From positions 5,208,001 to 5,272,000 of the forward strand of contig CM060731.1 in the NCBI GenBank assembly GCA_030704615.1: a stretch of DNA of 64,000 nucleotides, in the 5' to 3' direction. The DNA is from Takakia lepidozioides. Lineage: Eukaryota > Plantae > Bryophyta. The translations under genes and the position numbers were made by a program. Shown here one piece after another: positions 17,240 to 61,690 of this stretch. The notes under the pieces were generated by a model. The model saw only the letters and a program-made list of their open reading frames with translations. It was not told the DNA's origin and did no database searches. Every line of letters begins with the position of its first letter. The first letter of the stretch is position 1.

Positions 17240-17397
17240 GGGTTTCATGGAAAACTTGGCCCTCTTCTCTATTAAGATCAGGCAGCACCGCTCCATCTCT
17301 TGTGGCTGTTAGGGTTTCATGGAAAACTTGGCCCTCTTCTCTATTAAGATCAGGCAGCACCGCTCCATCTCTTGTGGCTGTTAGGGTTTCATGGAAA
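17240..17397. repeat. 72-bp in-frame tandem duplication inside copia B pol
   Basis: FHETLTATRDGAVLPDLNREEGQV occurs twice; a further partial copy lies at about 16558-16605, beyond an unrelated insert of about 630 bp. Confidence 0.85.
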
Positions 17398-35255: not shown

Positions 35256-38200
35256 AAACAACTGGTAATATGAAAGAACCAGTGTACCCATCACTGGTGA
35301 TTGACTTCAATATGATGTAAGTCTATGCTCTTAAGGGACAGAGCCAACAAATAGGTTCGTTACCACATTTTCTCCATTGACTTCAACAAGATGTAAAGTC
35401 TATGCTCTTAAGGGACAAAGCCAACAAATAACTTATTGAAACTGTGAATACTGTCAATCTCTGAACGTTCCAATGTTCAGATCAACTTGTTCCGAATGTA
35501 ATTTTCCTCAATCAACTTCTGCAAATCATAACTCTATTGAATCTAATCCAACAATCCCTGCACATTCTTAGACCGTCAATCAACTCTTAGTTCCTCTCGA
35601 GCATTGATATTGTCAAACAACTCACTCCAAATCCATGTAGTACAGATAACTATGAGCTGCAAAATCTCCCCACAACAGTAAAACTTCGGCCAAGTCAAGT
35701 ACATTTTACATTGATTCCCTCTTGTTATACATCCATATTTCCTTGTGAAGCCATGTTGGATGCAACCAATTTAGCATGGACTTTCCTTTACGCTCTCACG
35801 GCCACCCTTGCGTTGTGTTCAAGTTTGACGACGCTACCCGAGCTGAATTTATCCACCCGTGCTAGTCTTGAAAAGCATGCCATCTAATTTCGAGAGGGAA
35901 GTTAGATCATCTGTCCGGAGATATTAACATCAGAAGGGCCTGTACTTTGTTGGTGTGGCTGATGGTGGCATTTCTGCTTGCAGTGATGATTTCTCTCAAA
36001 TAAAGCACTTTTGATTTCAGCTTTGACCAACGTTGACTGAGTAGCAGGTGGGTGTTCAACCCTTCTAGATACAACGTGATCTTTCAGAAGTGAAGTAACA
36101 GCAAATTAAGCATCATGTCCTAATATAGAGTTATCATGTCTGTCGCCCTGAAGATATTGTTCTTGATTAACTGTTATGGTTGAAGTATATAGGGGTGCCT
36201 TTCAGACTTGCTTGTCACTTACCAAACCATGAGACTTCTACCAGTAGAGGGATAGAGCGCAAGCTTCAAATTAATCGAATCATACTTGGAGAACTTTCGC
36301 CTTGTGCGGCAGGTCTCACTTGGTACACCTATCAATAAGACTGAATACTCTGCTACAACCTGTATAGAACTATACGATGCCATGATTGCACAGCGCAATC
36401 AAGAAACCGCTTTGATTGCTGCCTGGAGGGTCAAACGAATGGCCAAATCCCACAAAAGTGCTGGAGTCCTCCGATCTGGATGAAAAAGTGAAGACCTATA
36501 TCACAGATTTGGGTATTCAGGTAAGGGCCTTGTCAAGCCAGCAATCTGCGATTGCACGCTCGGTGATGACAAGTGTGGAAGATGGTGGAGTGTCGACACA
36601 TCTAGATTTTTGACGATGGATTCTACTTCTGGACACCTCTCCTCAGCATGTATGTCTGTACTGGACTACGCTTCACAGCAATTCTCAACATTTTATTTCA
36701 CAAAGAATTGGGTTCTCGTCTCATTTGTCGAACTAGTATGAGAGCAGTTGATTTTGTGGAAAACATAGCCATATCCAGCTTAATTCGGCAAATTGGTGGG
36801 GTAAGAAGTAAGTGAGTTCTTGCTGTTGTAAATTTTATTTTGGATTGGAGGTACGAATTCAGCCATGTGAGGCTTGTCGATGCAAGAGCAGTCTTCTTTT
36901 GCACAGACCACTACGTGAAGTTTTTCTGGGTGTGCATAGGATCGGAATTGTGATTTCTCTGCTTGAGCACCTTCCTGATTTGAACTTACGAACTCCGTTC
37001 TCCCACCTAATTGGTTTGCACCAATTTTTCAGCTTTCACATGCCTTGGCACAGACAATGTGTGGCTTGAATTGGCCGGTGGAATATCGTGTTGAGCTGCT
37101 AAGGTGCTCACAAAGTCGCGTGAGGCTCCACCGTTCTCCGTCTATCCTGCAAATCAAACGAAGATTTCGTACATCTCCTTGACGCTGTACTATGTCAGCT
37201 GCAGATCTGATTTACAAAGCTAGATCGACCACGTATAGGGCAACCATGTAATATATAGAAACGAAGCTGATCCCCAGGAATATATTCAGTTTCGGACCAT
37301 TTCGCACATGTATGGCAACGTAAGAGTACAACCTCTGTAGCTTCCACGTTGTCATTACACATTGCAAGAGTGGCCTTCATTACAAACTCCTCATTCTCAT
37401 CTCTTGCTTCTGGAACAAGCAGCACTGGCATGGTTATCCAGCTACATATATTTTACCATCAGCTCCAGCCTACTTTCCATAAGCAGCATTTAGTAACAAT
37501 AGTAATATAACTGGAAAGAAGAAAGGAAGTGTTATAAAGAATGGACGTTACGCCTTAATAACGTCCAAGGGAAGCTCAAACATCATACGAAAATGGGGCC
37601 CCAACAACCAGCCACAACAACCATAAGACTACAATTCAACGGCTAGAGATTTTCTATAGCCAAAACAAACGTTATAATGTCCACAGGGGCCCCTGAGCGC
37701 TACATTTCGAGAAAACAGACAGGTGCTCTAATACCTTAGGGATCCTGCCCAGTTTGTGCATCCCTATATTGCGAATGTGCACTTTGGACAGAAGGTCGAA
37801 GACAAAGTGTAATATGACTTCAGTGTTGGTTCAACTGACCAGTCAGTTATGTATTTTGTTTTATCGCTGGCATAAATTGCTTCAAATTCTGATCACTTTA
37901 GGAACACCTAAAAGAAACACAAGATGAGGTAGTCATTGTTTGAGTTGACAGAAAATTAGAGTTGACCTACTTCTCATTCACTACCTCTCTGGTACTGGCA
38001 GATGTCTGAAGCTACTTCAACCAGTAATGCAAGAGGGGTTGAAAATGGAACCTTCGGTGCCCTCCGGAGATATAAGCACAAGCCATGAAGATACTCTCCC
38101 CTCTGATCTTTGGACATTTTCAGCAGCCATGACACTCAAGACAGCACTCGTTGGGAATCCAGACGGTACTCTACGATGACGGATTTCTTTTTGAGCAGGC

Positions 38201-41125: not shown

Positions 41126-41810
41126 GTGATGGCATGTTTGGCAGCGGAACAGAGAACGTTTTTTCGGACGTCGGGCAGATTAGATAATGCCTTCAGATCA
41201 TTTGGTGAAGGGGGCCCGTTCATGCCTCGTAAAGCAGCCCCTGTGGAAAACAAGCTGCAATGCAGTCTAGAGGAGCCCTATAAGGGCTCAACCAGGAAGA
41301 TGAAAATCTCCATAAGTATCGCTGATGCAAGTGGTAAGACACTCCCCGTTGAGGAGATTTTGACAATTGAGGTGAAGCCTGGTTGGAAGAAGGGGACTAA
41401 GATCACGTTCCCAGAAGAAGGGAAAGAGCAGCCCAACATGGTGGCTGCAGACCTAGTCTTTGTCATTGATGAGAGGCAACACGAAGTGTACAAGCGCAAC
41501 GGTAATGACTTAATTGTGGTACAGAAGGTCTCCCTTGTTGAGACGCTCACAGGTTGTACAGTCTCGTTGAAGATGAGAGGACATTGGGAGATAGGTGGGA
41601 GGACATGGATAGATGGGAGGACACTGAACCTATCTTTCTTAGATGTCGTCTGTCCTGGATATGTAAAAGGTTGTACCTAAGGAGGGGATGCCGGTTGCGA
41701 AGGAGCCCAGCAGAAAAGACAATTTGAGGATAAAATTTGAGATTGAATTCCCGACCAGGCTGACTGCAGACCAGAAAACAGGCTTGAACTGTTGGGGGCT
41801 AGCTAAAACA
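41126..41810 (+). pseudogene. Class B DnaJ/Hsp40 C-terminal substrate-binding region, no J-domain, frameshifted
   Basis: RKAAPVENKLQCSLEE, EILTIEVKPGWKKGTKITF, ADLVFVIDE, then PKEGMP...NLRIKFEIEFPTRLT in another frame; no introns in the fragment. Confidence 0.85.
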
Positions 41811-44739
41811 TCTTTGTTTCGCACAGCTGAGATGTAATGAGGTGTAATAACTATACATATGTTTGAATTAAAGCCACATCTGTGCATAGTCTTAAGCCAA
41901 GGACGGGATTGGTAAGCCTGAAGTATATATTTGTATTTCACCTCATGCACTTTTGCAGATCTTATTGCCTTTTTGGGGGAAATAAAATTTGTTTCGAACG
42001 GACTATTGGTTTGTGCATTACTCCTGTGGTATTCTATGCAATATGCAAGGCTTCTCTCTCTCTCTCTCCAAAACTCACATGGCTTCCTTTCTCTCAATGT
42101 TTCTTCTTTGCCCCTTATTTGTAGTTTTCGGTCCAACCCATGTCCATTGCAACATTTCCCTTGCACCGAGTGCCTGAAGTATATATTTGTATCTCACCTC
42201 ATGCATTTCAGATTGTGAGTCTGCATTATTCCTGCGGTGTTCTATTCAATATGTGTGGTTTTTTTCTCTCCCTCTCTCTCCCTCTCTCCGACTCTCAAAT
42301 CTGCATGGCTTCTTTCAATGTTTTTTCCTTGCCCCTTATTTGTGTTTTTGAGTGTAGGTTACGGCCATGTTAACTCTCTCCCTTGCCCTGAGTAACCTCA
42401 TGGGTATGTGTTGTCCCACTAGAGTTGTTTCAGGCTATCAGAGAAATCGGTGATCTTCTTGCCTTAGGGGCAATCAGGGACTAACAAAACTTGAATTTAC
42501 GAGGTTAAGAGTTCACAAGAGAAGGTTGCTAACTCTATATAGTGAGTGTTCCTGGTTGAGAGAAATGTGCAATCCAGGGACACGATGTGGAGGATAGTGA
42601 AGCATGTTCTGGCCATCTGCAATGGGTCCTCTTGCAATGATACCTCTGTATTGAAAGCATCAAAACAGACTGGCTGCACTTGCTTCTACTCACATCAAGA
42701 AGTGATTCATGTGTTGTGATGTCAATGTCTATCTTACAGGGAATCCCTTTCTTGTGTACCAATGTGTTTGGTTGACCCATAAAACTGCAAATGAAATGAA
42801 ATGGCTAGCTTCAGGATTATTGAAGTTGTCTGTAGGATGAGTTCTGCAATACAAGATCATTGCAATCAGACCCAGGTAGTACTTGTACCTATTTCAGAGC
42901 TAGTGCCAATTATCTTTTTGGCTCTGCCACTGGGCTTGTTCTTCTGTAGGACATTTTCTCATTTGAAGATACTGTCTCGAGACTGTTTGGAATAATTATT
43001 GATAGTTCCAAATCCAGTTATGTTCACGAGCTTATGTCTGGGTCACGTTATATATCCACCGCAGCTGAAGCTGCCTGCTTCTGAAGAGCAGGAGGTACGT
43101 GATTATCAATTGATGGTGATCATAACGGGGTAATCAGATGACTCAAATACATGCTTTTTGATTGCTTTTATTGAGTCCTTGAACCACGGCCTTCGTCAAT
43201 GTGCTGCCACCTTGCATTTAACAGCGACCATGAGTGGCAAACAAGGACAGCAGTAAAGCTTGAATGCTTGCCACTAGAGAGAAGGAAGGTACAAAAAACA
43301 CCACTGCTTGGAACAAAATCTAACTAACTATACTTATTACACATTCCTTGCTCATCCCCCAAGGGAAACAACCGAGGGGAAAAGGCTGTTTACACTGACT
43401 TTGGCTAACGTCGTCTCTCTACCTCTCTGAAACACTATGCAGTGCTCCCTACCTCTCCAATTTCAAGACTACGCATGCTTCACCAAAGCATTCTCAGCTG
43501 AAATGGATGGAGCTGCAGGAGCTCCACATGATCAACTGTCTCCAGGATCAGCAAGGACCATCAATACACAATAATCTAGACTGCATCTACTTTCAGTAAT
43601 AAATTTTGCGGTGAACAGCTGTAAACAGCACAAGAACTACTTCCAACTGTATACCTGTAGTTGTTTCCCATCTCCATGGGACTAAATGTATGGTAAACAT
43701 AAACAAGCCACAATGTGAGCTGGTTTCCAATGCATTTCAGCTTGATGTGAGGAGGTGTTCATAATTAGCCTCCGTACCATCTACTTTAATTGGACAAAAA
43801 ACGACACAACAACAAGAAACTAATACCTGCATCATGGGAGTGTGCCATATCCTCGAGTGACATTCGAACCTCATGAAATCCAAAAAACCCTAGGAGAGAA
43901 AGAAATAAATGGGCTTTAAGTATAGCCCTCGAGAAGCCCACTACAAACGCACTAAAACACAATCGTTGCAGAAGGACAACATGAGGGCCTCGCACTTCGA
44001 TAAAGGAGAGTAAATCAAAGAAAGTGAAGTAATTACTGATAATCTAAAAGTAAGTACTTTAATAATTAGTGCCAACTACACGGCGCTCCCCCAACATGGT
44101 GGAAAGATAGATATCATGTACTCCTGATTGTGGTGTGGATGTTGGAGCTCCTTGGAAGCTCGCAAGCCAACACAACGCTCCCCGAAACTACGGCGGCACA
44201 CTGTGGAAAGATATACAATGCACTCCTGATTGGCATTGGTGCGATTTTGTTGAGACTGCTGCAATTTGGGGGATTTGAGGTGTTCACACCTACTTCCCGT
44301 TACTTGATTGACTCCCTCTTGGGTCACAGTGAGCGAGCTTACCAAGGATACCTCGTTATCCTCCCCCACGAACCATGCACCGGGTTAACATAGAGGCACA
44401 ATCAACCCAATCACTATTGTTTCCCTGAGCGAAATCGGACCGTCTTTCTCGGTGACGTAACAAACTATAACAAGATGATGAGGGACCTCCCGTCGCCCTG
44501 CACGTACGTATCTTGCTTTGTTTGCCCTGCAAAGCATTTCAGACCGCAAACTCTGGTGCATTGGCAAAGTTAGCCAACACAAGTAAATCTGTCTTCGGAT
44601 AAATTTATTAAATATGTACCTAACACTAGATAGCATGTAGATTGAATTAGCACAGTGTAGATCAAACTGCTGAAATACATTCGAGTAACCTTGTAATGCA
44701 TGAAGTTGTGTGGACAACAATGACACTTGATTTACATAC

Positions 44740-45310
44740 CAACTAAGATTTCATGACATTATGACTTCCATTGGCACCCAAAACGAGTCACAAAGACGGA
44801 GAGCGATCGCATCAGCTCCCCACTTACTCGTCGGCGAAGTTCCAGTCCTTCACATTTGATTAGTTATTTAGACAATCCCCAACTGCGTTGCGTGCTTCGA
44901 GCTCGATGCAGATTGATCGAGCCAACACAATACAAGTGTCTCACCTGGTGCGGCCGCTTAGTGACCGACAAGCCAGCAGGAAGATCACGTGAAGATTTTC
45001 GTCAGGGGCCATTCCTGGTTTCCAACGTGTCTATCAATGCTCTCTATAGACACTTGGCTGTCTCTATCTCTCGTCGAGTTTCCCCTTTTTCTAAAGCCCT
45101 CCCAACTACAGCATTGGGGCAAGATAACCGACTCTCTGCACTCATGGTCGCTGTTTGAATCCTGGGTTGGCAGCACATTGACGAAGGCCGTGGACTTAAG
45201 GACTGTATAAAAGCAATAAAAAGGCATGCATTTGAGCCATCTGATTACCCTGTGATGGTCACCGTTGAAATTCACTTGCCTCCTGCTCTTCAAAAGCAGA
45301 CAGCCACAGT
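44740..45310 (+). pseudogene. Phosphoinositide phospholipase C X-domain remnant (may extend about 44100-46460)
   Basis: GSTLTKAVDL, CIKAIK, HAFEPSDYPVMVTVEIHLPPALQK followed by a GTGAGT donor; upstream LRARCRLIE-like remnant; frameshifted. Confidence 0.65.
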
Positions 45311-46499
45311 GAGTTTGTGTTCACACTTCATCGTGTTTCTCATGAAGAGCGTTTTGATAGCTATGCTTGAGTATGAGAATGGCACCAGCGGGTAGTAGCT
45401 TTGCAGGCCTATCCAGAGGCTACATCAAGTGCAGTCTAAAGGTTATTACTATGTTGGTGTCACTTGCATTTCTAGTGTCTGTTTGACTGTTAATGTCCTT
45501 TAAGAAAGAATATTGAAGTGTGGATTTGTGTGCTTGTGCATGTGCATGTGTTCCAGTCACGACAAGGCAAGATAATCCTATTGATAATATAATGCAGATG
45601 TTGAAGGCTATCATAGGTGACCGTTTACGCCGGCCCCTGTTCTATTTGCATCACCAAAGGCGTTGAAGGGTTTCCTCAATTGTCTCTGATAAACCTCGGC
45701 CATGAGATTATGTTGAAGAGTAGGTACTTTTGTGCCCATACTTTCATCATACGAAACCCTTCGAAAATCCTCATACTTAGTGGCTTCGTGTACAACTACG
45801 TCAACTTACCATCAACTTGGGTTGAACTAGAGGGTCTAACGGCCTCAAAATCAGAAGCGCCGCCAAGACAGTAAATTTGTTACCCATCGCAGACAAAAAC
45901 AATTGTAGTTCAACTTCTGTTGATAAATTCTATTCTGGGGGTATGCTGAAGGGCCATTTTTGGGCCCTTACCCTGAAAAGGTTGTGTTACCAGAAGTTCA
46001 ATTTCTTAAGACTGCCCAGCTCTGATAGGAAATATATGGTAGTGGCACAGTTCTGAGTGTGTTATGTACAACTGTTGAGATGGTGGTTTTAGTGTATATT
46101 CTTTGTATACAATTCATGGTTGGCTTTCTCTAAGATGTTCTTCACTCTATTAGCTTCCCCCCATATACAACCCCCCCCCCCCCCCCCCCCCCTTGACCAA
46201 ATCAGCTTCCATGTTTCCATCCACTTAATGGACTTACGGTTAGACCGCCAAATGTGTGGCACAAGCTCCCGAGGTAACTACTCGACATCTCATTGCAGAT
46301 AATGTTATTGATGGGAGCAACTCACCTGATCTAGATTCCTCAAAAATTGCAGAAGCCAAGGTTCATGCAAAAAAAGCTGAGAGAAAGACCGTGCAAAAAG
46401 TGACCACCACTGTTGCCAGAGCTGGACCTCATTCAGATTCCAATGTTCAAAGTCATACCTAAGACTTTTGAGTTTGAGGAGTTTGAGGCAATATACGAC

Positions 46500-46728
46500 A
46501 ACTATCATAATCGGCACCCAAATCCACCAATGATATCCATCACATGGATCCTCCTGGAAGAGCTCACCTAGTAGCGTACTTGTTTTGAACATTTGGAGTC
46601 CACACCCCCAGGTCGAAAGATAGTCTCCCTACTCCCCAACATTTCTGCTTGAGGACCTAAAGTTGCTTGGTCAACCATAGTATCTGACATGACTTTCACA
46701 AGACAGTGGTCAGATTAAGAGCAAATTC
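46500..46728 (-). ncRNA. Candidate Fanzor omegaRNA scaffold region (hypothetical)
   Basis: Immediately 3' of the Fanzor stop; imperfect hairpin ATCTGAC...GTCAGAT at 46682-46715. The assignment rests only on position, by analogy with TnpB/Fanzor loci. Confidence 0.25.
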
Positions 46729-49458
46729 TCATAGGGTACTGTGGGAAGTTTGTCCTCCCCTGCAGAAGGCTGGATGGCGAGGGAGAGAGTCGTGCATCTC
46801 CAGGAACCTATGCATGATGTTGATCGCGCCATTCACGTCCCGGTTCCAAACTGTCCAAGAACACGTTATGTTGGGACAAAGTCGGACCGAGTAGGAACCG
46901 CGACGCCCCGTGTTCCCTGGAAATTGACACATAGGCATGCCCTCCATCCTTTCCTCGCAAGCACAACACAATTGGTTCGTCCTAAACTCGTCCACCATCA
47001 CAAACTGCCCAGCTTTATCTCGGATCTTAGAAGTTGGGGTTAACTCCATCCCTGGGCTGTTGTGCACAAAAGAGGCATCCTTGACTATTGTGGCATAGGC
47101 ACGCTCTATCTTTATGCATGTCGCCCACCAAAGCTTCCTCATCCTCTTACTCACCACATAAAAGTTGTTCAATACACGAAGGTATTTCAACACTGTCCTA
47201 GCGTAGAGTATATAATCCTACAAAGTTGTCACCTTGGGAGAAATGGTGTTGTCCCGTGAATTAAACTCCATCACCCCTTGGTTTTTGGCCATCCACTACT
47301 TCGTCAACTTGGTCCGTCGTCTGTACCCACAGAGTGTGTAAAATCGGGAACTGCTGCATCTAATCAGGTGGAACCTGACCACCTTGTCCACCCAAGGATC
47401 CTGAAGTGCGGCCTCCCCTTTGGCCAAATGCACCACTCCGGTGTACAGTTGTTTTCGTCCTGGATCAATGGCCACGAGGCGTTGAGGAAGCATTGCCACC
47501 AGTTTGGGTGCCTCCATTTTTTGGCGTCCCTTAATCTGCAAAAGACGAGTACTATAATTAGTAGCCAAACACCGTAACACCGTACGCGCGCACGTATATA
47601 TCTTAGGTCATGTCATGAGGGACTCAAGGACTAACCATGCGTACATTGGTGGTGGAGGGTTTGTGACAGGTTGAGCCTGTCAGAATGCTGACTGAAACCC
47701 CGTCCGTAACGATGAAGTTTTGGAATGTGCGACCGCATATTTTGAATCTTCGATCAATCTTGAAAAAACTGTTGCAATATGATAAGAAACATATTATCCA
47801 CAATTAGTAAACGGAACCTGCATCAAGAGTTGAAGAATACCGTAATTGCAGTATGCATATAATAACCAAGGCCTTCACGTTGGATAGATCTATGTCTGTA
47901 AGAGACCCCTTGGCGAACCAAGCAACAAGGTTGAGCCTCCTTGTGTTGGAATAACCAAGAGAGAGAGTAGCAACATGAGGAAGAACATGGAGAAGGAGAA
48001 GCAAAGTAGGATCAGGCTAGAAAGGGCCAAAGCCATAGCCACCATTGAAAAAAATCTCAGCGGTATGTGGGGCACTTGGGCTTGACAAGCAGCAGAAGGG
48101 AACATAAGAAAGCATGTCTACGTTTGTATTTTATCCAGCCGTAATACCCATCAGCAGTTGAGGTAATTCTACCCCTATACGTGGTATCTATTTAGGTACT
48201 AGTTTATCAGTGTGGCTTATTCAGACACTAGTTGGTAGTAATTAGATCAGTCGAACATAAATGCATTCATGAGGCTAGTTTTCGTAGGGGCTGTGTACCC
48301 GAGGACTTCTTTCGAGGCCAAAAATGAGGTGGACCTCCTTCTTATCATTAAAACGGTCATTCAAATGCAGCATATGAAGTATAGCAAACAGTATGAAAGC
48401 AATTCTCGAGTCATATATGCGGGCAATCAATTCACTGGGAGAAATTAAAGACTCACAATCTCCATAGTTCCTCGTTGCTCAGGCTCTCTAGACCAGGGTG
48501 CCTCTCCACGATATTTGTTGCCTTCGTCGCTAACGACCGCAAGATGGAGTTGCTCATGGCCAATTGGATTGGTCTGATGTTTTTTTGTGGTAGGAGGGAG
48601 AACAGACCAAGACCCTTGAGCTTTTTTGAAACTATGGGGCGTCGTCCTTGATGTGGCGTCATGTAGCTAGGCATTGGAAACCTCTATGTGGTACATCTGT
48701 ACTTCGCGCAAGATTTTCCAAGTGGCCGTCGTGTAATCCAGTCTCCTCAAGTCTAGAGGTAGCAGCCCTGCTAGTAGATCGGTTTTGATAAGGTGACAAA
48801 TGTGAATGAGTTGTCCGACCTTATCGACCCCTATATCTCGAAGAGTGGTGTAGTTTACCATACGCACCCGAATGGCCGTCTCTGCAGACCCATGTTCTTT
48901 GGCCAGTGCGGCGTTCACGACCAAGTTGATGGCAAAGCGAGCCTCCTTAGTCTGAAATGAGCCAGATTTAGATAGCATCATCCTAATCCACTTTTTCAAC
49001 CGAAGGACAAAGTTGGACGAGATGGAAGTTTTGAAATTGTTGTGCATATGGTCGGCCAACATTCCTATGAGTTGAACCCAATGCGGTTTCCGGATGGGAG
49101 CACTGTATCATGTAGGCCGAAGAAGCTTGAACTCTTGGAATGAGGTCAAGAACTCGAATTTGAATCAGGGATCCTTGTTGATTTGTCAGAGTTTCCCATC
49201 GTTCAACACCATGCAAACAGCTCGGTTGAAGAACGTGGAGTTGCAATGCCATTTCTCAGGCAAGGATACCCCTTCAGCCAAACACCTCAGAATGTGATAA
49301 GAAACAAACAAGGAGGCTTCTACAGCTAAAGGGGTAAGCTCCCTAATAGTCTCTTCAATGACCCTTTTCATGGCCTCCCTCAAGCAAAATTTGGAGTCAA
49401 ATCCAACCTTTGTGGAGCTATACTTGATGACCTCTCGTTTAGCTATCCATTGCTTCAA
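46729..49458 (-). pseudogene. Fanzor1 (eukaryotic TnpB-like RNA-guided RuvC endonuclease), intron-containing, inactivated
   Basis: RuvC-I LVAIDPGRKQL; RuvC-II VMVDEFRTNQLCCAC; Zn finger ...LCPNITC; RuvC-III WNRDVNGAINI. Also FQNFIVTDGVSVSI, NNFKTSISSNFVLRLKKWI, LFSLLPQ and KRMRKLWW. GT-AG introns at 47769-48456 and 47536-47644 restore the frame. In-frame TAG stops at 47296 and 47218, plus frameshifts in the 5' part. Confidence 0.88.
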
Positions 49459-49714
49459 CCTCTTACCGGAAGCACCTTTTGATCAAGCCGACAATAAATT
49501 TGATGTGCCATAGTTAGTTCGTTGGGAGACCTATTTCTTGAGTAAATTCGCAGGGCCCCACATAAAGCACATAGCAACACATCTATGAAATTTTCTCTGA
49601 AATGTTGTAGCAAGTCTAATAGCTCTAGTACCTTCCACATTAATGGCCCTGACAGGTTATAAAGTGAAAATGAGCTCTCTTCTTTACAAGCATACACACC
49701 TTTCTGAGAGCTTG

Positions 49715-50820
49715 CCATCCTTGGACAGATCTTCAGAGACAGGAAAACAACATAGAAAACAACGTCAAAATATTTCATGATCATATGCATGTCTTATATA
49801 GGGAGAACAAGCTTGGGTCCAAGGCAGCCTCAAGTAGCTAATGGTGGATCTGTAACTGATAAAGATCAATATCCCCCTGGAGTAATGATATGATTGTTTT
49901 ACATCAGTACGCACATCAGATGATGAGGACGAGATAGGTGCAGCCAACTCACTAATATTATTTTCTCTATCTACAGATCGGGTATTAATTTCATAATTTC
50001 TACTCCAGACTCTCCAGATGATTTAGTTTCTCTACAGCTTAATTTCAAGCCTAATATTTGCTCAACACTGACGCCATACTGAAATCTCTTTTCATACCTT
50101 CATTCCATACTGTCTCACATATAAGAACTATTAATGCTAATCGCTAAAGGAAGAAAAAGATCGATCTTCGAGTTAGGGACTATGCACATCACTCTGCTGA
50201 CTGCTCACATCTGACTCCGTGGTCCAAAATAGGTTGGTTCTCCAAAATCACCCATAGGCTCCACTGACCATCCTTGGACAGATCTTCAGAGACAGACAAA
50301 CAAATTATATGATCATATGCATGTCTTAGAAAAGGAGAGCGTGCTTGCGTCCCGAGCAGCCTCAAGCAGATAATGGTGGATCTGTAACTGATAAAGATCA
50401 ATATCGCCCTGGAATGATGTTTGTTCTACATCATATGCACATCAGATGATATGGACGAGACATGTGTAACCAACTCTAATAAAATTACTTTCTCTATAGA
50501 TCACATATCAGGTATTAACTTCATAAACTGAAATTCCTAATCCAGACTGCCTAGTCCAAACTCTCCAGATCATTTGTTTCTCTACTTCATTTCTACAAGC
50601 CTAATATTTGCTCAATATTGACGCTATACTAAAATCTCTTTTCATACCTTCAGTCCACACTCACTCACTTAGAACTGTTAATGCTCAGTATAATCGCTAA
50701 AGGAAGAAAAAAAAATCAATCTTCGAATTAGAGCCTATGCACATCACTATGCTGACTGCTCACATTTGAGATCTGACTTCGCGGTCCGAAATAGGTTGGT
50801 TCTCCAAAATCACCCACAGG
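49715..50820. repeat. About 555-bp tandem duplication upstream of the Fanzor
   Basis: CCATCCTTGGACAGATCTTCAGAGACAG at about 49715 and 50268; AAATAGGTTGGTTCTCCAAAATCACCCA at about 50227 and 50790. Confidence 0.85.
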
Positions 50821-50849
50821 CGTGTTGGACCTCCACCAAAGGTCGATTC

Positions 50850-51465
50850 TGCAGTGCTCGTGTTTACACTATGTGCTCATTTCGCTACGGTGCTCGTTTT
50901 TTTACTCCGCTCATTTCTACACGGTGCTCTCTTTTCTCTACGGTGCTGGTTGCTACACCGCTATGGCACTCTCGCCTCAACACGGTGCTCATTTTTTTAT
51001 TCTGCTCGTTTCTACTGTGTTGAGCAGTAGGCTCTGTAAATTCACTGGACGTTAAAGAAACTTTATCTTTATCTCTTTTATCTACGGTGCTGGTTGCTAC
51101 ACGCGGGTGCTCGTGTTTCTACTGTGGTTGTTTCTCTACGTGTGTTGAGCAGTAGGCTCTGTAAATTCACTGGATGTTAAAAAAACTTTATCTTATCTTA
51201 TCTATGGTGTTGGTTTCTACGTTTCTACGGTACTCTCGTCTGAATACGGTGCTCGTTTTTCTACTATGCTTGTTTATCTACGGTGCTAGTTTCAACACAG
51301 TGCTTGTTTTTCTATACGGTGCTCGTTTCCACAATGCTTAATACTAGTACACAGTGCTCGTTTTTTTATACGGTGTCGATTCTCGTTTCCACACGGTGCT
51401 GGTTTCTACAGTACTCTAGTTTCAACACAGTGCTTGTTTCTACGGTGTCAACACGGTGCTCGTAA
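50850..51465 (-). repeat. Array C of the 17-bp repeat, inverted relative to A/B
   Basis: ACGGTGCTCGTTTCTAC units; internal duplication of about 55 bp at 51017 and 51142. Confidence 0.88.
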
Positions 51466-52254
51466 CGTGTGCATTTGTCCAGCCGTCCATCTTAGCATCC
51501 TTTATCCTACGAATTTCACCATTATGTTACCCACTCGCAGATTTTGTGTTCAGATGAAATAACACTCGGAAGAGCAATGAGCTGCAGACTAGCAAGTAGC
51601 CTCTAGAATATGCTTATCCCTAACAAGAATGCACGGAAGAAAAATTGGATAAACAGGAAGCATGATTTCTTTCTACATGACTTTGCGAAGTTCAAATAGA
51701 AACAGAATGGAGAGTCATTAGAGAGATAGATTACAAAATTTCACTGGACTTTCAATAAAATCCTCCAAGATCACTGATAAAGCAACTAGGTCCTTGAGAT
51801 AATCAAATTACCACGCAACATGGTCTCATACTGCCGCCACCGCTACAAAGGATAACACTTCTACTGCTCTCTAACATAACGCTCAAACAAACAAGGCTGA
51901 ACAGCCCAAACGGTTCGATAGTGTCCACTGGATCCAGTCCCAAGACCGTAGGTAGAAGGGTGCCCTCCACTGGTGCCTATACCCATGTTCCGTAAGCCTA
52001 CACCAAACAGTCAACGTATTGATAATGGGATGAACGCCCGCAGAATATAGAGAGGGGTCTACGGAAAAATCCCCACACACCTGGATCATCCATGGCCGCC
52101 CTAACCAAACAAATCCAAACCACTAGATGATCGAGATTCTCCGCATTCATGAAATCGACATTCATGAAATTTCGCAATATTGAAGATATAGATCCCCATT
52201 GAAAACTTTTCTAATCTTATCAGGGGTGTACATTTCGTGGTTCACGATAGAGAG

Positions 52255-52713
52255 CGTTTCTCCACTGTGCTCGTTTCTACACGGTGCTCGTTTTTCTACT
52301 CCGGTCGTTTTTACAATGTGCTCGTTCTCTACGGTGTTCGTTCCACGCGGTGCTCGTTTCTAAGGTGCGCTCATTTCTACACGGCGCTCGTTTCCACACG
52401 GTGCTCGTATCTAAGCTGGTGCGCTTGTTTCTACCGGTGGTCGTTTCTAAGGTGCGCTCGTTTCTACCGGTGCTCGTTTCTAAGCTTGTGCGCTCATTTC
52501 TACCGTCGCTCATTTCTAAGGTGTGCTCGTTTCTGCCGTTGCTCATTTCTAAGGTGCGCTCGTGCCCACACAATGTTTGTTTCTAAGCTGGTGCGCTCAT
52601 TCTTTACGGTGCTTGTTTCTACCGATGCTCGTTTCTAAGCTAGTGCGCTCGTTTCCACACGGTGCTAGTTTCTACACGATGTTCCTGTCTAGGGTGCTTG
52701 TGTCTACACGGTG
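52255..52713 (-). repeat. Array D of the 17-bp repeat, inverted relative to A/B
   Basis: ACGGTGCTCGTTTCTAC and TAAGGTGCGCTCGTTTC variants; ends ...CTACACGGTG. Confidence 0.9.
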
Positions 52714-53079
52714 TATGTCCATATATACATTATATACAGAAATAAGTTAAAAATTATAGATTACAATTCAATTGAATTACAAATTTACAATTCAATTGAA
52801 TAGGTTGCAAATTAAGGTTGTTTTCAAGCTAGTTTTAGCAGTTCAATCGAATTGCGTACTTTTAGGAGCAGGGATGCCTCGGCGTGAGCCTGGTCACGTG
52901 AGCGCGACTGCGCTCACGCCACGTCACCTTGCGCAAATGCCACGTCACGGGGCTCAGTCCACGTCATCACACGTGGAGGCCGAGTCACCACGCACCCAGA
53001 AAGAAGTGGAGTGTATTCCCGCGGATTGGCACCCTTTACCGCGGAAACAAGCTGGACGACATAATAAAAGGCATTGAAT

Positions 53080-53887: not shown

Positions 53888-56800
53888 TTACTCACATGAA
53901 AAGTCGTTGTCGACCTGCTTATCTTCGGGATCGTCATCATTTCGAATATGAATCCGATCAGTCTGTGTGCCTGAAGTGGAGCCAGACAAAAGGGGGAGGA
54001 GCACTGTGTTGTAGAGGTCAGAATCACCCTCCATACCAAAAAGGCTTCTTCCGCCTGCCTTGCATGCGTGGTAAGTTGCTCCTGCACCAGACAGGAGAAC
54101 ATAAGCAGTTTGGAGGAGGGGATTTAAGCAGATGAAACTGTTGAAAGGAAACCAATTCGGAAGGGAGAAAACGAACCTGTGGACACAGAAAGATCGACCA
54201 TCCGTGCAGAGGGGTGGCTGCATGACTCCAGCAGTATTTGCATGAATGCTGGTGACTTTTCCTTTGCACCTCTCCAGGGAGTGCCATCTGGTCTCTTCAG
54301 AGTCTGACTGGACTGCATGAAGTTGTACAAAATGTCATCGACATGGGGCTCATAGGGGGGGTTGACGAAACAACCCGGGTCAGAAATCTCAAAGCTGCGG
54401 ATGGAGGATGGTGTCTTTGATGTGCGAATCCTCCGCAGGCAGATCGCCTCGAACATCCTCGTCTGCCAAAGATAGCAGGTTAGTGTGGTAAACACAATCT
54501 AAAGTGGAAGTGTGTACATCGGCTATTCAGAACTCTGACACCAAAAAACCATGAATCGTTGATGATCGGTGTCGATCATAAAACATTCTACCAGAGTGGA
54601 GCTGCAGAGAAAATTGAAACTCATGATCAAAGCATAAGCAGAAGGCAGACGGCATACCAGCTGACCAGGGAAACCCCCTTTCACAAGGTAGAGGCTGTTC
54701 ACACAATTCCATGTGCGCAAAACTTCAAACCCTGAAGACTTGAGGTATGATGCCAATGCCCGACGACTATCATTGTCACATGACTGAAAAAGCAGAAGTG
54801 TCCCTGCATCAGAGAGGAAATTGTTACAGAACCCGAATACCCAACTCCAGTAGTTGTCCTCGAATTTGTTCCACCCTGGCGTCTTGCCCTTTGGAAGAAC
54901 TTCTGGCACAGCCTGGCCATCCGGGATGTCGAGAATGACAATGTCGGCCGCATAAGTTTTCTGCACACCGCACACGAAGGTGGGACCTGTGCTCACCTGC
55001 AACAGACATGTTTTTTATAAGAACGATGGCAAGAATGTTTTCTAAGAACGAGACTGAAATACTACCAACGAAACATTCAGAGAAAAAGGAAAGAAAGTGG
55101 AATTCTCACCAGATTGAGGAATGAGATTATATTGTCCCAGGTAGGGGATGGCACCCCAGTGTATCCTCTCTTTCGACTCTGCATCATCGAAAGCCAACCC
55201 TCATTAACAATTTTCATCTCTCCTGCTGAATCAGAACGGGAAGGGTGTGGCTTGGCATCGAACACGCACTGAAGAGTGCGGGTATATCTTCCAGCACTAA
55301 AGTCCTGCCCACTCTCCATCTCCTTTTCATTCTCCTTCCCCTTGTCCTTTTCTTTCTCTTTGGACTTGTCTTTGTCCTTTGGCTTTGCTGGTGAGATGGC
55401 TATGACATCAACAGCCTTGTCTTTTGGTTTGCGGCCCGCCTTCTTTCCCTTCTGCGGCGTTCCCTGAGCATCAGGCTCCTTGGCAGCCAAGGTTGCTATG
55501 TTTCGTTGATACTCTTCGTCAGTCAAAGGCGCCAGCATCTCAGCGTTATTGTTCAAGTATTTCATATGCTGTTCTTGAAAGGTCGTGTGCTCAGGTGGGC
55601 AGTCAAGGTACCACCCACAGTCTCTGAAGTGAGAAGGACTCCAGTCCTTCAATATCCCTGCAGTATACATGGTTGGATCGTTTGCAGGGTCCGACCACAT
55701 GTCAAGATAGTCGGGAATTCCGCTCAGGTGATTTCCTTCCATAAGCACATATTTCGTGTACCTGAAAAAAGGAGATGAATCCCAACCCACAAAAGCGCTC
55801 AGTGAGTAAGATGCAAGTAGAACAGAAAGAATAAAACATGGATTGAAATGGCTCTGACAACTGCTCCAAGGACCTTTCAGGACCACACTACTGCTCCAGA
55901 TATGAATGTCGTCAACGCCATTCAGAACATTCCATTCCATGACACTGTAAATACATCCTAATCCAGGTGAATGCAAATAAGCGATTAGAAATGACACAGA
56001 CATAGAAGTGAATGTCGTCAACGACATTCAAGAATGAAGCCAAATTATTACTGAAATGAAGCAAAATCACAGGATGGAAATAAAAAAATTGAGTAAGGAA
56101 CCATCCAAGAAAACTCAATGCACATTCATAACGAACCTATCACTGAGGACCTCACAACATCACTGTATATGAATGGCGTCAACGCCATTCACAAAAATAC
56201 AAAAAAGAAACCAATTACTTAGCTCCCCAATCCATGAAAATTGAATTTGTCGTTTTTGAATAATACAGACACAGCTGTGAATGTCGTCAACGACATTCAC
56301 TTTGGATTTCTTAAAACAGAGCTTATCAAGCCTCCATATTCATCGCAAGAGGAAAAAACAATGCAGAACAACTGAATGTCTGCATTGACATTCAGCAAAA
56401 TGAAGTGATCAACCCTCATTGTAACCTCTATGGACATTACAAAAATTTAAATAACCTTGAGGACCACACAACAACTCCGTATGTGAATGTCGTCAACGCC
56501 ATTCAAGGACATTATCAATTCTAATCAGGGACAATATAATTGCACCCTTAGATCCTAACCAGGTGAATTCATATACTCGCTTAAGAATGACTCAGACAAA
56601 GAAGTGAATGTCGTCAACGACATTCAATCTGGATCTAAGATTGCAATCCATATGAAGCCACAATTTTTCCCAAAAAAATAGTAGAGTTTCAAGTATGACA
56701 TTTCACCTGTACACAACTCGCATCATGGCCCACTCTCCTCCAACCTGACTGTCAAAGTCGTTGGACCGTAAAATGTTACCATCTTTGGAGAACTCCCGGA

Positions 56801-59006
56801 AAAAACAGTATCTCCAGGTGAGACCTCTCCACTTCCTTATGTATGCCTCCAATGACATTTGGGGAGGGGAAACAATCGCAATGTTCAGGTCCTTCAAAGT
56901 CTGATCCAGCACAATGACGGCGCGCTTTTCGAGCTGCAAATAGTATATTTGTCAGAATTGCAAAAAAGAAACACATCACATACTTGAAGAGAAGAAACAG
57001 CATGTTCGAATACACACCTGACTCCAAAATGTAGCCTTGTGGAGCCAGTTATCAAACACCAAATCACTGATTCCTTCCACCTTTGTGCCAGGCTGTATGG
57101 TGCTCTTTGGGAACTGATTCAAGTCCTTTCCTGTTTGATCTGAGTTCCATATCTCCAGCCACCTTATTTTTGTTTGTGGGTCGACCATCGATATGGCCAG
57201 CCGGTGCAATTTCTCCTGCTGCATCTCCGGATGCACATGCTTGTCATAGTGTGTTTTGATCTGCTGAAGGAACTCAGGACCAAGTCCAGGATCTACTATT
57301 CTAAGCTGCTTTCCGAAGGCTGACATCAATTTGGTTCTTCGCATCTCAAACTCCTTCTTTATTGCAGCTTCCACACCCTTTGATGTCCTTAGTTCCTCTG
57401 GTGTAGTGCGGTAATATTCGGATTTTCCCTTCTCAGCTGCCTCTGCCAGTTCTTGCTGCATTCATTCAAGTAGTGATTAGCTCCGAAGGGACTCTAAACA
57501 TGTATTCGAAAAGTAAACAGATTACAGACTCGGGCTTACCGCATACATGTACTCCAGAAACGCCTCTCGTGTCAAAGAATACCAAGTGCCTGCAGCTCTT
57601 TCTGTTTCGCACTTCTTGATGATATTGGGTGGTAGTACTGTCCGAAAATCATCCAGCTTCATCAGACCAATCCTCTGAATTCGGAATAGTGTGTGAACCA
57701 AGCTTGTTGTCACATGCGATTTCTCTGTCGATCTGCAAAAACATTGAAAACATTGCATTCCTTAACACTGTTTTTTGAGGATCAACAAGACACTACAGAG
57801 GGAATCAAATCTCCTGGATGACTTACTTGTTCACGTCGTGCATAGCTGTAAGAAGCCTAGCGATGTCGTTTCCTGGATCCAAAACCATTGCCTCCACAGC
57901 AACATGCTTGTCTTTGTCTTTCGAATGGTGTTTCTGAATGTATCCCATCCATGCCAGCAATCGGTGGTTGCCGTCCCAGACGTAGAACATGTGGTTGCAA
58001 AATTGCTGGGTGTTCTTTCCCATCATGAGGCCCAGCTCGAACTCCTCATTGGCATCTTTCCAGCACTCATCCCAGTTATCACTGATCTCTGGAGAAACTA
58101 ATGTGCTTTTCCCATTTATATCCGTCAGTGACACATAAAAAACTTGTGCACCAAGTCTATATCCATGCACAAAATCACTCTCCAATTTTGTTATGTCATG
58201 GGAAAGAGGTGGACGCACAACAGGCATTGATATCATCCGGCACAGAGGTATGTCCAGACGCCCTCCAGATACGAGCATGTCCCTTATAACCTCCTGAGAG
58301 TTTACCTTCTGGAATGACATGAGTTCTTTCACCTTGTCAAGGTAGTGCACTTCGGATTCATCTGCTTCATCTGTATTCTCTGAGCTTTTTGCGGACTCGT
58401 CCCCATCTCCAGATCCTTTCCCCTCTGATCCTGTAGGCTTCGACCTCACAGTTTTCTGCACGATGCCAGTCAGTTCTGACTAAGTGATTTGCAAATAGTG
58501 AATGGCGGTAACGACAATCACTCTGTATTAAGGAAACTCACCATGAATGGTGTGAAAGAATTCAGCACAATCTACACATGCAAAGCCGAGACTGCCGTAT
58601 TCAAAACAAAAGTGAGAGCGATAGCGAACGGCGTTAATGACAATCACAAAAGATAACAACCTGCCGGATCGGTGTTGTGTAATGACATATATGTGCAACT
58701 GATTGACGGCAACGACATTCAGTGTAGTTTAGGGAGAATAGTAAGTGCAGACTCTCTCTTCAAACACATAGGTACATAAATCTCATGAGCAGAATCGAAT
58801 GGCGTTAACGACGCTCGCGATTCAGTAGTTCCTGCTAAAGAATGGAAGAGGAAGGACTCCTTGAAAGGCAATCACACAGACTATATGATAAAACTTACTG
58901 GCACCTTCTTAGGTTTTGAAATTTGATCCCCTTCTGCAGCTTTCCTCTTCCCTCTCACATCTGCTGGAGTTTCTGTCTGCGCAAGGGTTTCTTGACCTTC
59001 TTCCAT
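53888..59006 (-). CDS. ParB/Sulfiredoxin-domain protein fused to a beta-class N4/N6 amino-DNA-methyltransferase-like domain (about 1020-1030 aa, 9 exons)
   Basis: Exons 58899-59006, 57827-58479 (alternative acceptor 58455), 57540-57732, 57018-57455, 56707-56933, 55110-55761, 54658-54996, 54177-54462 and 53888-54081; all GT-AG, phase-consistent, no stops (3090 nt). ParB-like: VVRPP...KLESDF...FYVWDGNHRLLAW. MTase: ADIVILDIPDG (motif IV-like), then EKSPAFMQILLESCSHPSARMVDLSVSTGATYHACKAGGRSLFGMEGD (motifs X-I-II). Confidence 0.8.
55903..56626. repeat. Seven spaced 22-bp palindromes TGAATGTCG-TCAA-CGACATTCA in intron 5 of the ParB-MTase gene
   Basis: Copies start at 55903, 56009, 56170, 56278, 56373, 56484 and 56605. 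Confidence 0.9.
58499..58817. repeat. Four degenerate copies of the same palindrome in intron 1
   Basis: TGAATGGCGGTAACGACAATCA (58499), CGAACGGCGTTAATGACAATCA (58625), TGATTGACGGCAACGACATTCA (58701), CGAATGGCGTTAACGACGCTCG (58796). Confidence 0.7.
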
Positions 59007-59151: not shown

Positions 59152-61690
59152 TGTTAGAAAATTAGTGACTCTCTCAGCATATGGCCCACTCGTGAGGTGG
59201 CCTCCCTTGTAGTATTTAGTTCAATTTAGTGTTAGTCAATTGGCCATCCAGGTTTCTAGGCTTTCCCCACCCAACCACTGTTTATTACTAGTTAATGCAC
59301 TCCTTCAATATTTCGTGCGAGCATGGAAAACCGGGTTTCGAGCAATCTTTGCACTGCTCTGATTGTCACATTTGATCACATTTGGTCCATCCTTCAGAAT
59401 ACCTAATTCCTCGTACAATCTTCGCAACCAACTGGTCTCCTTAACACCTTCAGTGAGTGCGCGATATTCAGCTTCTGTGGACGACAACGCCACAGTTGGC
59501 TGTTTTTTGGATCTCCAAGTGATTGCACTTTCTCCCATTCTAAAGACATCATGAAGTTTTATCACTCTCACCCACCCAGTCTGCGTCTGTGTGACCATTT
59601 AGCAAAGTACCTGATCCCCTTCGATAAAAGATCCCATAATCTGTTGTACCAGCTACATATCTTAGGATGTGATCGACCGCATCCATGTGAGCCTTCTATG
59701 GCACCTCTATGTAACGACTCACTGCTCCAACCGAGTACACCAAGTCGGGTCTGGTGTTCGTCAAATAAACAAGTTTCCCTACCTTTCTTCAATACAATGT
59801 TGCATCTGAAAGTGGAGTGCCCATGTCAATTGACAATTTGAGATTCTCGATCATAGGCACTTCATGTGGATTGCAATGAGAGAATCCTAATTCTACAAGC
59901 AATTTCTTAACATACCCCCTCTGAGTGATCATAATGCCCTCTTCGAGATGAAGAAATTCAGCTACTAAATATAGTTGTATGAGGCCAAGATCAGTCATAT
60001 CGTAAGCAAGCTTGAATTGTTCGTGCATCCAGACTATCTTTTTTGAGTGACTGCCGGTTAGCAGTAAATCATCCTTGTCATTCTCTTTGTAATAGTAGAG
60101 ATTGTAATATGCACCAGAGCGGTTAAGACCTTGAGATTGAAGGAAGGAATCGATGTTTGCATACCAAGCACGTGACACTTGCTTGAGGCCGTAAAGTACC
60201 TTCAACAAGTTACATACCTTAGTTTCATGACCTGGCTTTTGAAATCCCTCTGGTTGTCTCATAAAGACTTCCTCTTTCAATTCGCCATTCAAGAACGCGG
60301 TTTTGACATCCATGTGAAAGATCACCCAGTTTGAGTATGCGGCAAGTGCAACAATCGGTCGAATAGTTCCCCACTTCACCACAAGGGCAAATGTCTCGTT
60401 ATAATCGATTCCCTCGCGCTGTTGGAAGCCACGTGCAACCAACCTTGCTTTGAGCTTGTCTGGTGACCCATCAACTTTTTGCTTGATTTTGTAAACCCAC
60501 TTAGCAGTGATTGGAGTTTTCCCAGGAGGAAGGTCCACTAATTCCCAAGTTCTATTCTTGGAAATCGAGTCCATTTCTGACTGCATTGCATCGCACCAAC
60601 CCTCCACCTGAGAAGCTTCATGAAAGCTTGTAGGTTCCTCACTTTCAACCACATTCACATAGTCATCCAAGAGAGCTGGCCTTCGACGAACTCTTGTTGA
60701 CGTGCGTTCAATAGTGTGCATAGGAGTGGCAACTTGCTTGTGAGTTGGTTCAATAGGTCCTGCCTCATCTTCAATATGTACATCATCTTCTGGGTTAATC
60801 TGAAGATCAACGTGAATGTCAATAGCAGGAGGGGTCGGTGGATTTGGTATTGTGGCCGTTTGTTGGACTATTGATTCTTCAGAACAATCATCATCTCCAT
60901 CATGCATTCGATGTCAATCAGAGTGTTGCTCTGCTTCAGGTGCATCTCCTTGAACAGGGATCTTCTCGATAAACGTCACATCCCGACTAACAAAGATCTT
61001 ACGTGTGGTAGGATTGAATAATCTGTAAGCCTTCGTTTCGATGTCGTAACCAACTAGGATAAAAACTATGGATTTTGGATCCAACTTGCCCCTGTATTGT
61101 TTATCAACATGAACAAAAGACTTGCTGCCAAAAATGCGAAGATGAGATATCACTGGTTTGGTACCTGAAAACTTCTCATGTGGAGTCATACCAGCATTTG
61201 CACTTGAAGGACACCAATTTATCAGATAAGCAGCTGTATTCACAACTTCCGACCACATAAACTTTGGTAGATCAGCTTCGAGTACCATACTCCTTGCGCG
61301 TTCAAGTACAGTGCGATTTTTGCGCTTTGAAACACCGTTTTGCTGTGGTTGCGAGGTTGACTGAGTTGTCGTGTGATCCCCTGCTCATGGAGATATTTAG
61401 TGACAGCATGAGACATAAATTCACGACCACGATCTGCTCTCAAACATTTGATCGTCTTTCCAGTCGCATTCTCAATCATGTTGAAAGTTTTGAAGTTTTG
61501 CAGAGCCTCATCTTTCCTTCTCAAAAAATACACCCATGTGTATCGGCTATAATCATCAGTTATGGCCATAAAGTACCTTGAGCTTGAGAGTGATGGTGCC
61601 TGCATAGGACCACACAAGTTCGTGTGCAACAGTTGGAGTATCTCAGTAGCTCTATGTTCAGCTTAGGAAATTTCTTTCGTTGATGTTTTC
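59152..61690 (-). mobile_element. Ty1/copia retrotransposon C, 5'-truncated and degenerate
   Basis: HTNLCGPM, DDYSRYTWVYFL, LRADRG, WSEVVNTAAYL, KARLVARGFQQ, HMDVKTAFLNG, SSTEAEY, KCDNQS, FHARTK; left boundary and LTR uncertain. Confidence 0.88.

What the first reader, a model, noticed from the sequence alone, without database searches (positions are those of the whole stretch)
46729..49458. Intron-containing Fanzor1 (RNA-guided TnpB-family nuclease) in an apparent land-plant genome
Seen: scattered minus-strand ORF pieces join, through two canonical GT-AG introns (47769-48456, 47536-47644), into one protein carrying RuvC-I (AIDPG), RuvC-II (VDEFRT), a CxxC...CxxxxC Zn finger, RuvC-III (NRDVNGAINI) and a TDGVSVSI motif. 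Known: this architecture defines Fanzor1, OMEGA nucleases characterised mainly from fungi, algae, protists, molluscs and giant viruses. Inference: the introns indicate long residence in the nucleus rather than bacterial contamination. This copy is dead (two TAG stops, frameshifts), but all three catalytic acidic residues remain, so intact paralogues may exist as a plant-native programmable nuclease family.
Basis: partly seen in the sequence, partly recalled or inferred. Interest (0 to 1): 0.92.

Follow-up and report, generated by a model that had tools for sequence, protein, structure and literature searches.

The report
Dead Fanzor1 gene in a moss
A moss chromosome (probably Takakia) carries a broken, intron-containing copy of Fanzor1, a known RNA-guided DNA-cutting enzyme of jumping genes; it shows that this family reached land plants, possibly through giant viruses, but this copy cannot work.

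Summary
Observation confirmed. Minus-strand pieces at 49482-46729 tile a Fanzor1 profile in order. The two GT-AG introns carry no profile match, and removing intron 1 restores homologue spacing exactly. The TDG motif, DPG, the relocated RuvC-II glutamate, the C4 finger and the RuvC-III aspartate are all present. Homologue profiles and folds match solved Fanzor1 structures far better than Fanzor2 or TnpB. The copy is more damaged than reported: five stops, one frameshift, a 39-nt deletion in RuvC, and no detectable omega-RNA or transposon ends. DNA contigs reproduce the five stops, the frameshift and the deletion. Two probable RNA runs show no exon coverage, so splicing is inferred. The closest relatives are intact Fanzors in 2.1-kb Mariner-like elements on giant-virus-type contigs, but a viral donor is not established. 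The scan noted further Fanzor relics elsewhere in this genome. I found no paper reporting an embryophyte Fanzor, though key supplements were unavailable. Verdict: new member of a known family with a notable host extension; no intact copy shown.

The parts
48670..49482 (-). Exon 1, first reading frame: N-terminal WED/REC part of Fanzor1; three TGA stops (49188, 49167, 49110); start codon not identified
   Evidence: profile positions 11-258, i-E 1.6e-38; tblastn of several homologues
48457..48669 (-). Exon 1 after the frameshift (shift lies at about 48673-48644); ends in a split codon, phase 2
   Evidence: profile positions 261-304, i-E 8.7e-10; frame change in tblastn
47769..48456 (-). Intron 1, 688 nt, GTGAGT...CTAAT...CAG, phase 2
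   Evidence: removal gives W-to-TDG spacing of 23 aa versus 22-26 in 15 homologues; no profile match inside; not seen in RNA
47645..47768 (-). Exon 2 with the Fanzor1-specific TDG motif of the WED domain (47707-47699)
   Evidence: profile positions 325-355, i-E 4.9e-7; motif per PMC10711439
47536..47644 (-). Intron 2, 109 nt, GT...CTAAT...TTTTGCAG, phase 0; donor could also be 47635
   Evidence: spliced TDG-to-DPG spacing 44 aa (homologues 34-62); unspliced 80.3 codons with a frame change
46729..47535 (-). Exon 3: RuvC-I, REC2 helices, RuvC-II, zinc finger, RuvC-III; TAG stops at 47298 and 47220
   Evidence: profile positions 393-649, i-E 1.4e-69; Pfam PF07282 E 1.3e-7
47464..47466 (-). RuvC-I catalytic Asp in a DPG motif
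47078..47079 (-). Site of an in-frame deletion of about 39 nt (13 codons) that removes a conserved RuvC strand
   Evidence: gap against all homologues; D-to-E spacing 159 versus 164-180; a paralogous contig of the same sample holds 40 letters here (table 5c)
46987..46989 (-). RuvC-II catalytic Glu in the Fanzor-type relocated position (six residues between it and the first Cys)
   Evidence: definition in PMC10711439
46861..46968 (-). C4 zinc finger (CxxC ... CxxxxC)
46837..46839 (-). RuvC-III catalytic Asp in NRD
46562..46731 (.). Place where the omega-RNA should lie; occupied instead by sequence that resembles a transcribed host gene
   Evidence: RNA-run contigs match 46562-46684 (15 other letters) and 46668-46731; fold z-scores -1.8 to +1.1; no match to omega-RNA-like tracts of relatives

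Best explanation
A pseudogene of a Fanzor1 nuclease in the nuclear genome of an early-diverging moss, probably Takakia lepidozioides. Shown: protein family, exon order, lesions, moss host, diverged paralogues. Inferred from the family: the ancestor was cargo of a DNA transposon. It was transcribed by the host, spliced, and loaded with an omega-RNA made from the element's right end plus a short stretch of flanking DNA. It cut double-stranded DNA next to a short AT-rich motif at the vacated donor site, so that repair restored the element (homing). The gene stayed functional in a nucleus long enough to gain two spliceosomal introns and to spread to several loci. This copy then lost its right end and omega-RNA and decayed. 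The most likely entry route is a giant virus (about 50%, not established).
For: Colinear profile match of all four pieces. Homologue profile hits SpuFz1 7.5e-26, GtFz1 4.3e-24, PpFz1 8.5e-19 and no TnpB or Fanzor2 at E<0.01. Model of the close homologue P0151 (pLDDT 85) matches Fz1 at TM 0.63-0.70, Fz2 0.25, TnpB 0.23. The window's own C-terminal piece ranks Fz1 chains first, though weakly. Host gene at 26.6-32 kb groups with mosses (95/94) and falls outside Sphagnum+Bryopsida in two of three exon trees; 5085 windows x 64 kb is about 325 Mb with a piece over 68 Mb, matching Takakia 325 Mb, N50 83 Mb (PMC13120521). DNA contigs match 46412-47014, 47113-47989 and 48001-49868 with no differences; about 20 contigs under 90% identity show related copies. 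Nearest relatives are 2.11-2.17 kb elements with ~27-bp inverted ends and TA termini, with a 120-138 nt structured post-stop tract showing compensatory changes; three lie on one giant-virus contig, one on a virus-like contig.
Against: No RNA evidence for splicing or expression (only two contig-level runs, RNA status guessed). No transposase, inverted ends, target duplication or omega-RNA found around this copy. The invariant Ser after the RuvC-II Thr is Asn here. Species name is inferred, not read from a record. The DNA runs may be the assembly's own sample. Sister grouping with viral copies depends on sampling (97/96; SH-aLRT 84; unsupported).
Confidence: 0.88

Rival explanations
1. Same gene, but inherited vertically from streptophyte algae (or taken from an algal or fungal associate such as Trebouxia) rather than from a giant virus.
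For: Fanzor1 is published from Klebsormidium and Chlamydomonas (PMC10530073). Trebouxia copies belong to the same broad clade and also have introns. AU test does not reject a moss+Trebouxia clade (p 0.13).
Against: Moss introns lie at homologue positions about 323 and 355-365; the Trebouxia-type gap mapped here lies near 569 in the zinc-finger linker. No annotated protein from Ceratodon, Sphagnum, Marchantia, Riccia, ferns or seed plants appeared among the Fanzor hits although their host genes are in that database. Viral copies are the nearest rows in every tree.
Confidence: 0.35
2. The gene is part of an endogenous giant-virus fragment that never worked in the plant; the 'introns' are later insertions into a dead gene.
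For: Giant-virus fragments are known in moss and lycophyte genomes (PMC4083422). No spliced transcript seen. Intron 1 contains a short repeat with raised contig depth.
Against: Intron 1 has a canonical donor, branch-like word and acceptor at the phase-compatible position that restores homologue spacing; random insertions would rarely do that twice. No other viral gene was recognised in the window; flanks are host-gene fragments, Copia remnants and other elements.
Confidence: 0.08
3. Contaminating algal or fungal DNA mis-assembled into the moss chromosome.
For: Close relatives occur in Trebouxia and in soil, rock and lichen metagenomes.
Against: Exact-match contigs bridge both gene ends into flanking DNA, the 3' flank resembles host transcripts, and contig depth equals that of the flanks. 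GC (46%) is the same as the window. Related relics were noted on other pieces (unchecked).
Confidence: 0.03
4. A domesticated, nuclease-dead host gene (for example an RNA-guided repressor).
For: Introns and a gene-like layout.
Against: All three catalytic residues are intact while the frame is broken by five stops and a frameshift; no expression seen.
Confidence: 0.02

Closest known systems
Fanzor1 (SpuFz1 of Spizellomyces punctatus, GtFz1 of Guillardia theta, PpFz1 of Parasitella parasitica; PDB 8gkh, 9cer, 9cf0)
   Same: About 630-aa layout WED/REC/RuvC/ZnF; TDG, DPG, relocated Glu, C4 finger, NRD; family profile and fold match.
   Different: Only 13-18% identity between the modelled homologue and the solved ones; this copy is a pseudogene with two introns and no detectable omega-RNA; host is a land plant.
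Intron-containing CrFNuc (Chlamydomonas, Helitron2) and intronless KnFNuc (Klebsormidium nitens), PMC10530073
   Same: Fanzor1 in the nuclear genome of a green-lineage organism, multi-copy; introns in CrFNuc.
   Different: Those hosts are algae and have intact copies; no carrier transposon was identified here.
Fanzor1 in IS630-Tc1-Mariner elements of the Chlamydomonas giant endogenous virus (bioRxiv 10.1101/2024.09.03.611062)
   Same: The nearest relatives found here are Fanzor-only elements with inverted ends and TA termini on giant-virus-type contigs; that paper shows virus-host sharing of Fanzors.
   Different: The moss copy has no such ends and sits among host fragments, not viral genes.
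Fanzor2 / IS607 TnpB / IS605 TnpB / Cas12f
   Same: RuvC triad and zinc finger (Pfam PF07282; NCBIfam guided_TnpB weak, 28 bits versus cut-off 100).
   Different: TDG motif and long REC present; fold scores far lower (TM 0.21-0.25); no serine recombinase or Y1 transposase nearby.

Membership tests
Fanzor (both classes) | DPG motif at RuvC-I (PMC10711439) | tested here: met
   Asp codon at 47466 in AIDPG
Fanzor (both classes) | Relocated RuvC-II Glu six residues before the first CxxC | tested here: met
   ExxxxxxCxxC at 46989
Fanzor/TnpB | D-X(125-275)-[TS]-[TS]-X-X-C4 finger-X(5-50)-RD (PMC3627910) | tested here: met
   Spacing, four Cys and RD present; one mismatch, second [TS] is Asn; Pfam PF07282 above cut-off
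Fanzor1 | TDG motif in the WED domain | tested here: met
   47707-47699, invariant TD in 22 homologues
Fanzor1 | Extended REC/WED, about 600+ aa, Fz1 fold | tested here: met
   Pieces cover profile positions 11-649 of 652; homologue model matches Fz1 at TM 0.63-0.70. The window's own 162-aa piece gave a low-confidence model with Fz1 as top but non-significant hits. The joined protein was not folded.
Fanzor1 | Encoded in a eukaryotic or giant-virus genome | tested here: met
   Moss host gene in the same window; junction contigs
Fanzor1 OMEGA system | omega-RNA scaffold downstream of the ORF, running to the element's right end | tested here: not met
   Not found at this copy; present in the nearest viral relatives. 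Only known-relative-like tracts and fold energy were tested, so a divergent moss scaffold is not fully excluded.
Fanzor1 OMEGA system | Carried by a DNA transposon (ends, target duplication or transposase) | tested here: inconclusive
   No inverted ends near the gene; paralogues share the upstream region; inverted 17-bp arrays flank a 20-kb segment but no termini were defined
Fanzor1 OMEGA system | Intact frame and RNA-guided, motif-dependent DNA cleavage | tested here: not met
   Five stops, one frameshift, one deletion; cleavage itself cannot be tested with these tools
Fanzor2 / IS607 | Close similarity to IS607 TnpB, linked serine recombinase, no TDG insertion | tested here: not met

The most novel reading that the evidence does not exclude
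The moss genome still holds at least one intact, spliced Fanzor1 with its omega-RNA, descended from a giant-virus Mariner-type element: a land-plant-native RNA-guided nuclease family and a direct trace of virus-to-plant transfer followed by intron gain.
Probability: 0.17. Interest if true: 0.8.

Novelty: new member of a known kind. Interest (0 to 1): 0.55.

Why it matters
The Fanzor papers I could read place the family in fungi, protists, animals, algae and giant viruses; their 'plant' examples are algae. A multi-copy, intron-bearing Fanzor1 family in a moss extends the range to embryophytes and shows that such an enzyme once worked in a land-plant nucleus. It gives a test case for giant viruses as carriers of selfish nucleases into plants and for de novo intron gain in a transferred gene. 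As a tool source its value depends on a naturally intact copy, which was not shown. The intact viral relatives, with clear element ends and a folded omega-RNA-like tract, are the more usable by-product.

Tried and rejected
In scripts, single exon pieces were read through with X at stops. Pfam found nothing meaningful in the N-terminal pieces. Rfam: no match at 44-53 kb. Six 150-nt windows around the stop fold no better than shuffles. DNA profiles of viral and Trebouxia-type post-stop tracts and the viral inverted end do not match near the gene. The metagenome scan gave intron-split relatives that first looked like moss copies; they come from Antarctic rock communities (PMC7171226) and end like the Trebouxia copies, so I found no second land plant. 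The IMG/VR scan gave only distant giant-virus Fanzors at about 20-26%. A link to the upstream ParB-methyltransferase gene (53.9-59 kb) was set aside: it has its own repeat motifs and earlier notes place it in a separate cassette (unchecked). A strict viral-sister claim was dropped because support changed with taxon sampling. Supplement searches for land-plant names in three Fanzor papers gave nothing, but the files held lacked even known algal names, so this is uninformative.

Full report
Observation. The stop-free C-terminal piece (46732-47217) matches Pfam Cas12f1-like_TNB above its cut-off (E 1.3e-7) and found 205 relatives at E<0.001 among 1.84 billion representatives. tblastn of intronless full-length relatives (620-740 aa) against the window gives four colinear blocks in frames -2, -3, -1, -2. 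Scored separately against a profile of 22 relatives (alignment A1), the pieces occupy profile positions 11-258, 261-304, 325-355 and 393-649 of 652, and the two intervening sequences score below zero in every frame.

Introns. Intron 1 (48456-47769, 688 nt) has GTGAGT, a CTAAT word and CAG. It is phase 2, and its removal gives a spacing of 23 residues between the conserved Trp and the TDG motif, against 22-26 in 15 homologues. Intron 2 (47644-47536, 109 nt) has GT, CTAAT and a pyrimidine tract before CAG. Spliced, the TDG-to-DPG distance is 44 residues (homologues 34-62); unspliced it is 80.3 codons with a frame change. Its donor is uncertain between 47644 and 47635. Both introns are inferred from homology and signals. 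Two probable RNA runs of the same species have no contig on any exon, which shows neither splicing nor silence.

Damage. There are five premature stops (TGA 49188, 49167, 49110; TAG 47298, 47220), one frameshift near 48673-48644, and an in-frame loss of about 13 codons at 47078/47079 that removes a strand conserved in all relatives. Contigs of DNA runs match 46412-47014, 47113-47989 and 48001-49868 without differences, so the stops and the frameshift are not assembly errors, with the caveat that these runs may be the assembly's own sample. The deletion site lies between two of these exact contigs; a related contig of that sample holds 40 letters there, which supports a deletion in this copy. 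About 20 contigs under 90% identity lie on the region; one matches both exon 1 and exon 3, so diverged paralogues exist. The three catalytic acidic residues are intact. No ATG start was identified.

Family. The published fingerprints of Fanzors are DPG at RuvC-I and a Glu six residues before the zinc finger; Fanzor1 adds a TDG motif in WED (PMC10711439). All are present. The profile of relatives hits SpuFz1, GtFz1 and PpFz1 in the PDB (E 7.5e-26, 4.3e-24, 8.5e-19) and no TnpB or Fanzor2. A confident model of the close relative P0151 matches Fz1 structures at TM 0.63-0.70, against 0.25 for Fanzor2 and 0.23 for TnpB. The window's own piece gave a poor model whose top hits were still Fz1 chains, not significant. 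The protein is therefore a Fanzor1. The locus is not a complete OMEGA system: no omega-RNA-like fold or match was found after the stop, and the sequence from 46731 to 46562 resembles a transcribed host gene, so the right end appears lost.

Host. An ASC-1/AlkB fusion gene at 26644-31960 is most similar to Ceratodon and Sphagnum orthologues and groups with mosses (95/94 in the best-resolved exon tree). In two of three exon trees it falls outside Sphagnum plus Bryopsida. The scan covers 5085 windows (about 325 Mb) with a piece longer than 68 Mb. Takakia lepidozioides is sister to all other mosses with a 325 Mb genome and N50 83 Mb (PMC13120521). The species is an inference; another agent reached the same guess, which is not independent evidence. 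Contamination is unlikely: exact contigs bridge both gene ends into flanking DNA at the depth of the flanks.

Relatives and origin. The best-scoring full-length relatives lie on contigs with giant-virus hallmarks: VLTF3, PCNA and D5 primase, RNA polymerase, capping enzyme, major capsid protein. Others are from Trebouxia, Tetrabaena and Amoeboaphelidium; no annotated land-plant protein appeared. Three copies on one 395-kb viral contig and one on a virus-like contig are 2.11-2.17 kb elements with about 27-bp inverted ends and TA termini, a conserved 120-138 nt tract after the stop, and variable sequence beyond. The tract folds into three stems, five pairs showing two-sided changes among only four related sequences. 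This is the layout expected of a non-autonomous Mariner-type Fanzor element with omega-RNA and guide, as described for the Chlamydomonas endogenous virus. In trees of exon 3 these copies are always the nearest rows (44-45% identity over aligned columns). The sister grouping scored 97/96 with 42 rows, SH-aLRT 84 under a mixture model, and was unsupported with 90 or 22 rows and for the N-terminal piece. A moss+Trebouxia clade is not rejected (AU p 0.13). Algal Fz1 reference sequences were not in these trees. Giant-virus fragments are known from moss and lycophyte genomes (PMC4083422). A viral donor is the leading guess at about even odds. Trebouxia-type copies have a gap consistent with an intron at another position, which fits independent intron gain.

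Mechanism. Shown: family, exon order, lesions, host clade, presence of paralogues. Inferred from established Fanzor1 biology (PMC10432273, PMC10530073, PMC13565253): the ancestor was transposon cargo that used an RNA from the element's right end to cut vacated donor sites and promote restoration of the element. Intron gain implies a period of transcription and selection in a nucleus, though that nucleus need not have been a moss's. This copy is inert. The carrier transposon is unidentified. Inverted arrays of a 17-bp unit at 33.2-35.3 kb and 50.8-52.7 kb enclose the gene together with DnaJ and phospholipase C fragments, which could mark a gene-capturing element, but no termini were found.

Novelty. 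Fanzor1, its introns, and its presence in green algae including a streptophyte alga are published. I found no report from an embryophyte in ten literature searches, but taxon tables of the main surveys were not available and one survey lists Streptophyta without detail. The scan had noted at least nine other Fanzor-related findings in this genome, among them another intron-containing copy with a candidate omega-RNA (unchecked). Verdict: new member of a known kind with a real host-range extension; interest 0.55; the chance of an intact, virus-derived plant-native family is put at 0.17.

Noticed in passing
L001:9819-11992, L172:2656-4816, L173:2447-4602, L168:1498-3608: Fanzor1-only elements of 2.1-2.2 kb on giant-virus-type contigs, with about 27-bp inverted ends, TA termini and a conserved folded 120-138 nt post-stop tract followed by variable flanks: omega-RNA candidates.
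   Followed up: partly
L101, L103, L105, L116, L161, L169 (3' ends): Trebouxia-type intron-containing Fanzor1 copies share a post-stop tract of about 110-150 nt with a sharp right end; a second family (L125, L130, L131, L146, L152) has a different tract.
   Followed up: partly
window 26644-31960 (+): ASC-1/TRIP4 zinc finger fused to an AlkB dioxygenase; the same fusion is annotated in mosses, liverworts, a lycophyte, a fern, gymnosperms and some algae, while most angiosperm hits carry only one part. Used here to place the host.
   Followed up: yes
window 33200-35300 and 50840-52720: Arrays of a degenerate 17-bp unit in opposite orientation, two on each side, enclosing about 15 kb that holds the Fanzor gene and host-gene fragments; no termini or target duplication found.
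   Followed up: partly
window 45228-45663 (+) and 41126-41680 (+): Broken fragments resembling a phosphoinositide phospholipase C gene (weak Pfam hit; a paralogue is spliced at 45308/45598 in an RNA run) and a DnaJ C-terminal domain.
   Followed up: partly
window 43065-43236 and 45139-45309: Inverted pair of about 170 nt at 83% identity, 1.9 kb apart; the right arm overlaps the phospholipase C exon.
   Followed up: no
window 49715-50821: Tandem duplication of about 550 nt directly upstream of the Fanzor gene; related contigs cover this region too.
   Followed up: no
window 53888-59006 (-): Multi-exon gene with ParB-like and methyltransferase-like motifs and repeated palindromes in its introns; no Pfam hit for four single ORFs tested.
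   Followed up: no
window 8826-10543 (-), 13372-19830, 59300-60907, 63196-63978: ER-type calcium ATPase fragments, nested Copia remnants, and a SWIM-finger ORF.
   Followed up: no
L172:6035-6460: An ATG8/APG12-family gene on the giant-virus contig, near a Fanzor copy.
   Followed up: no
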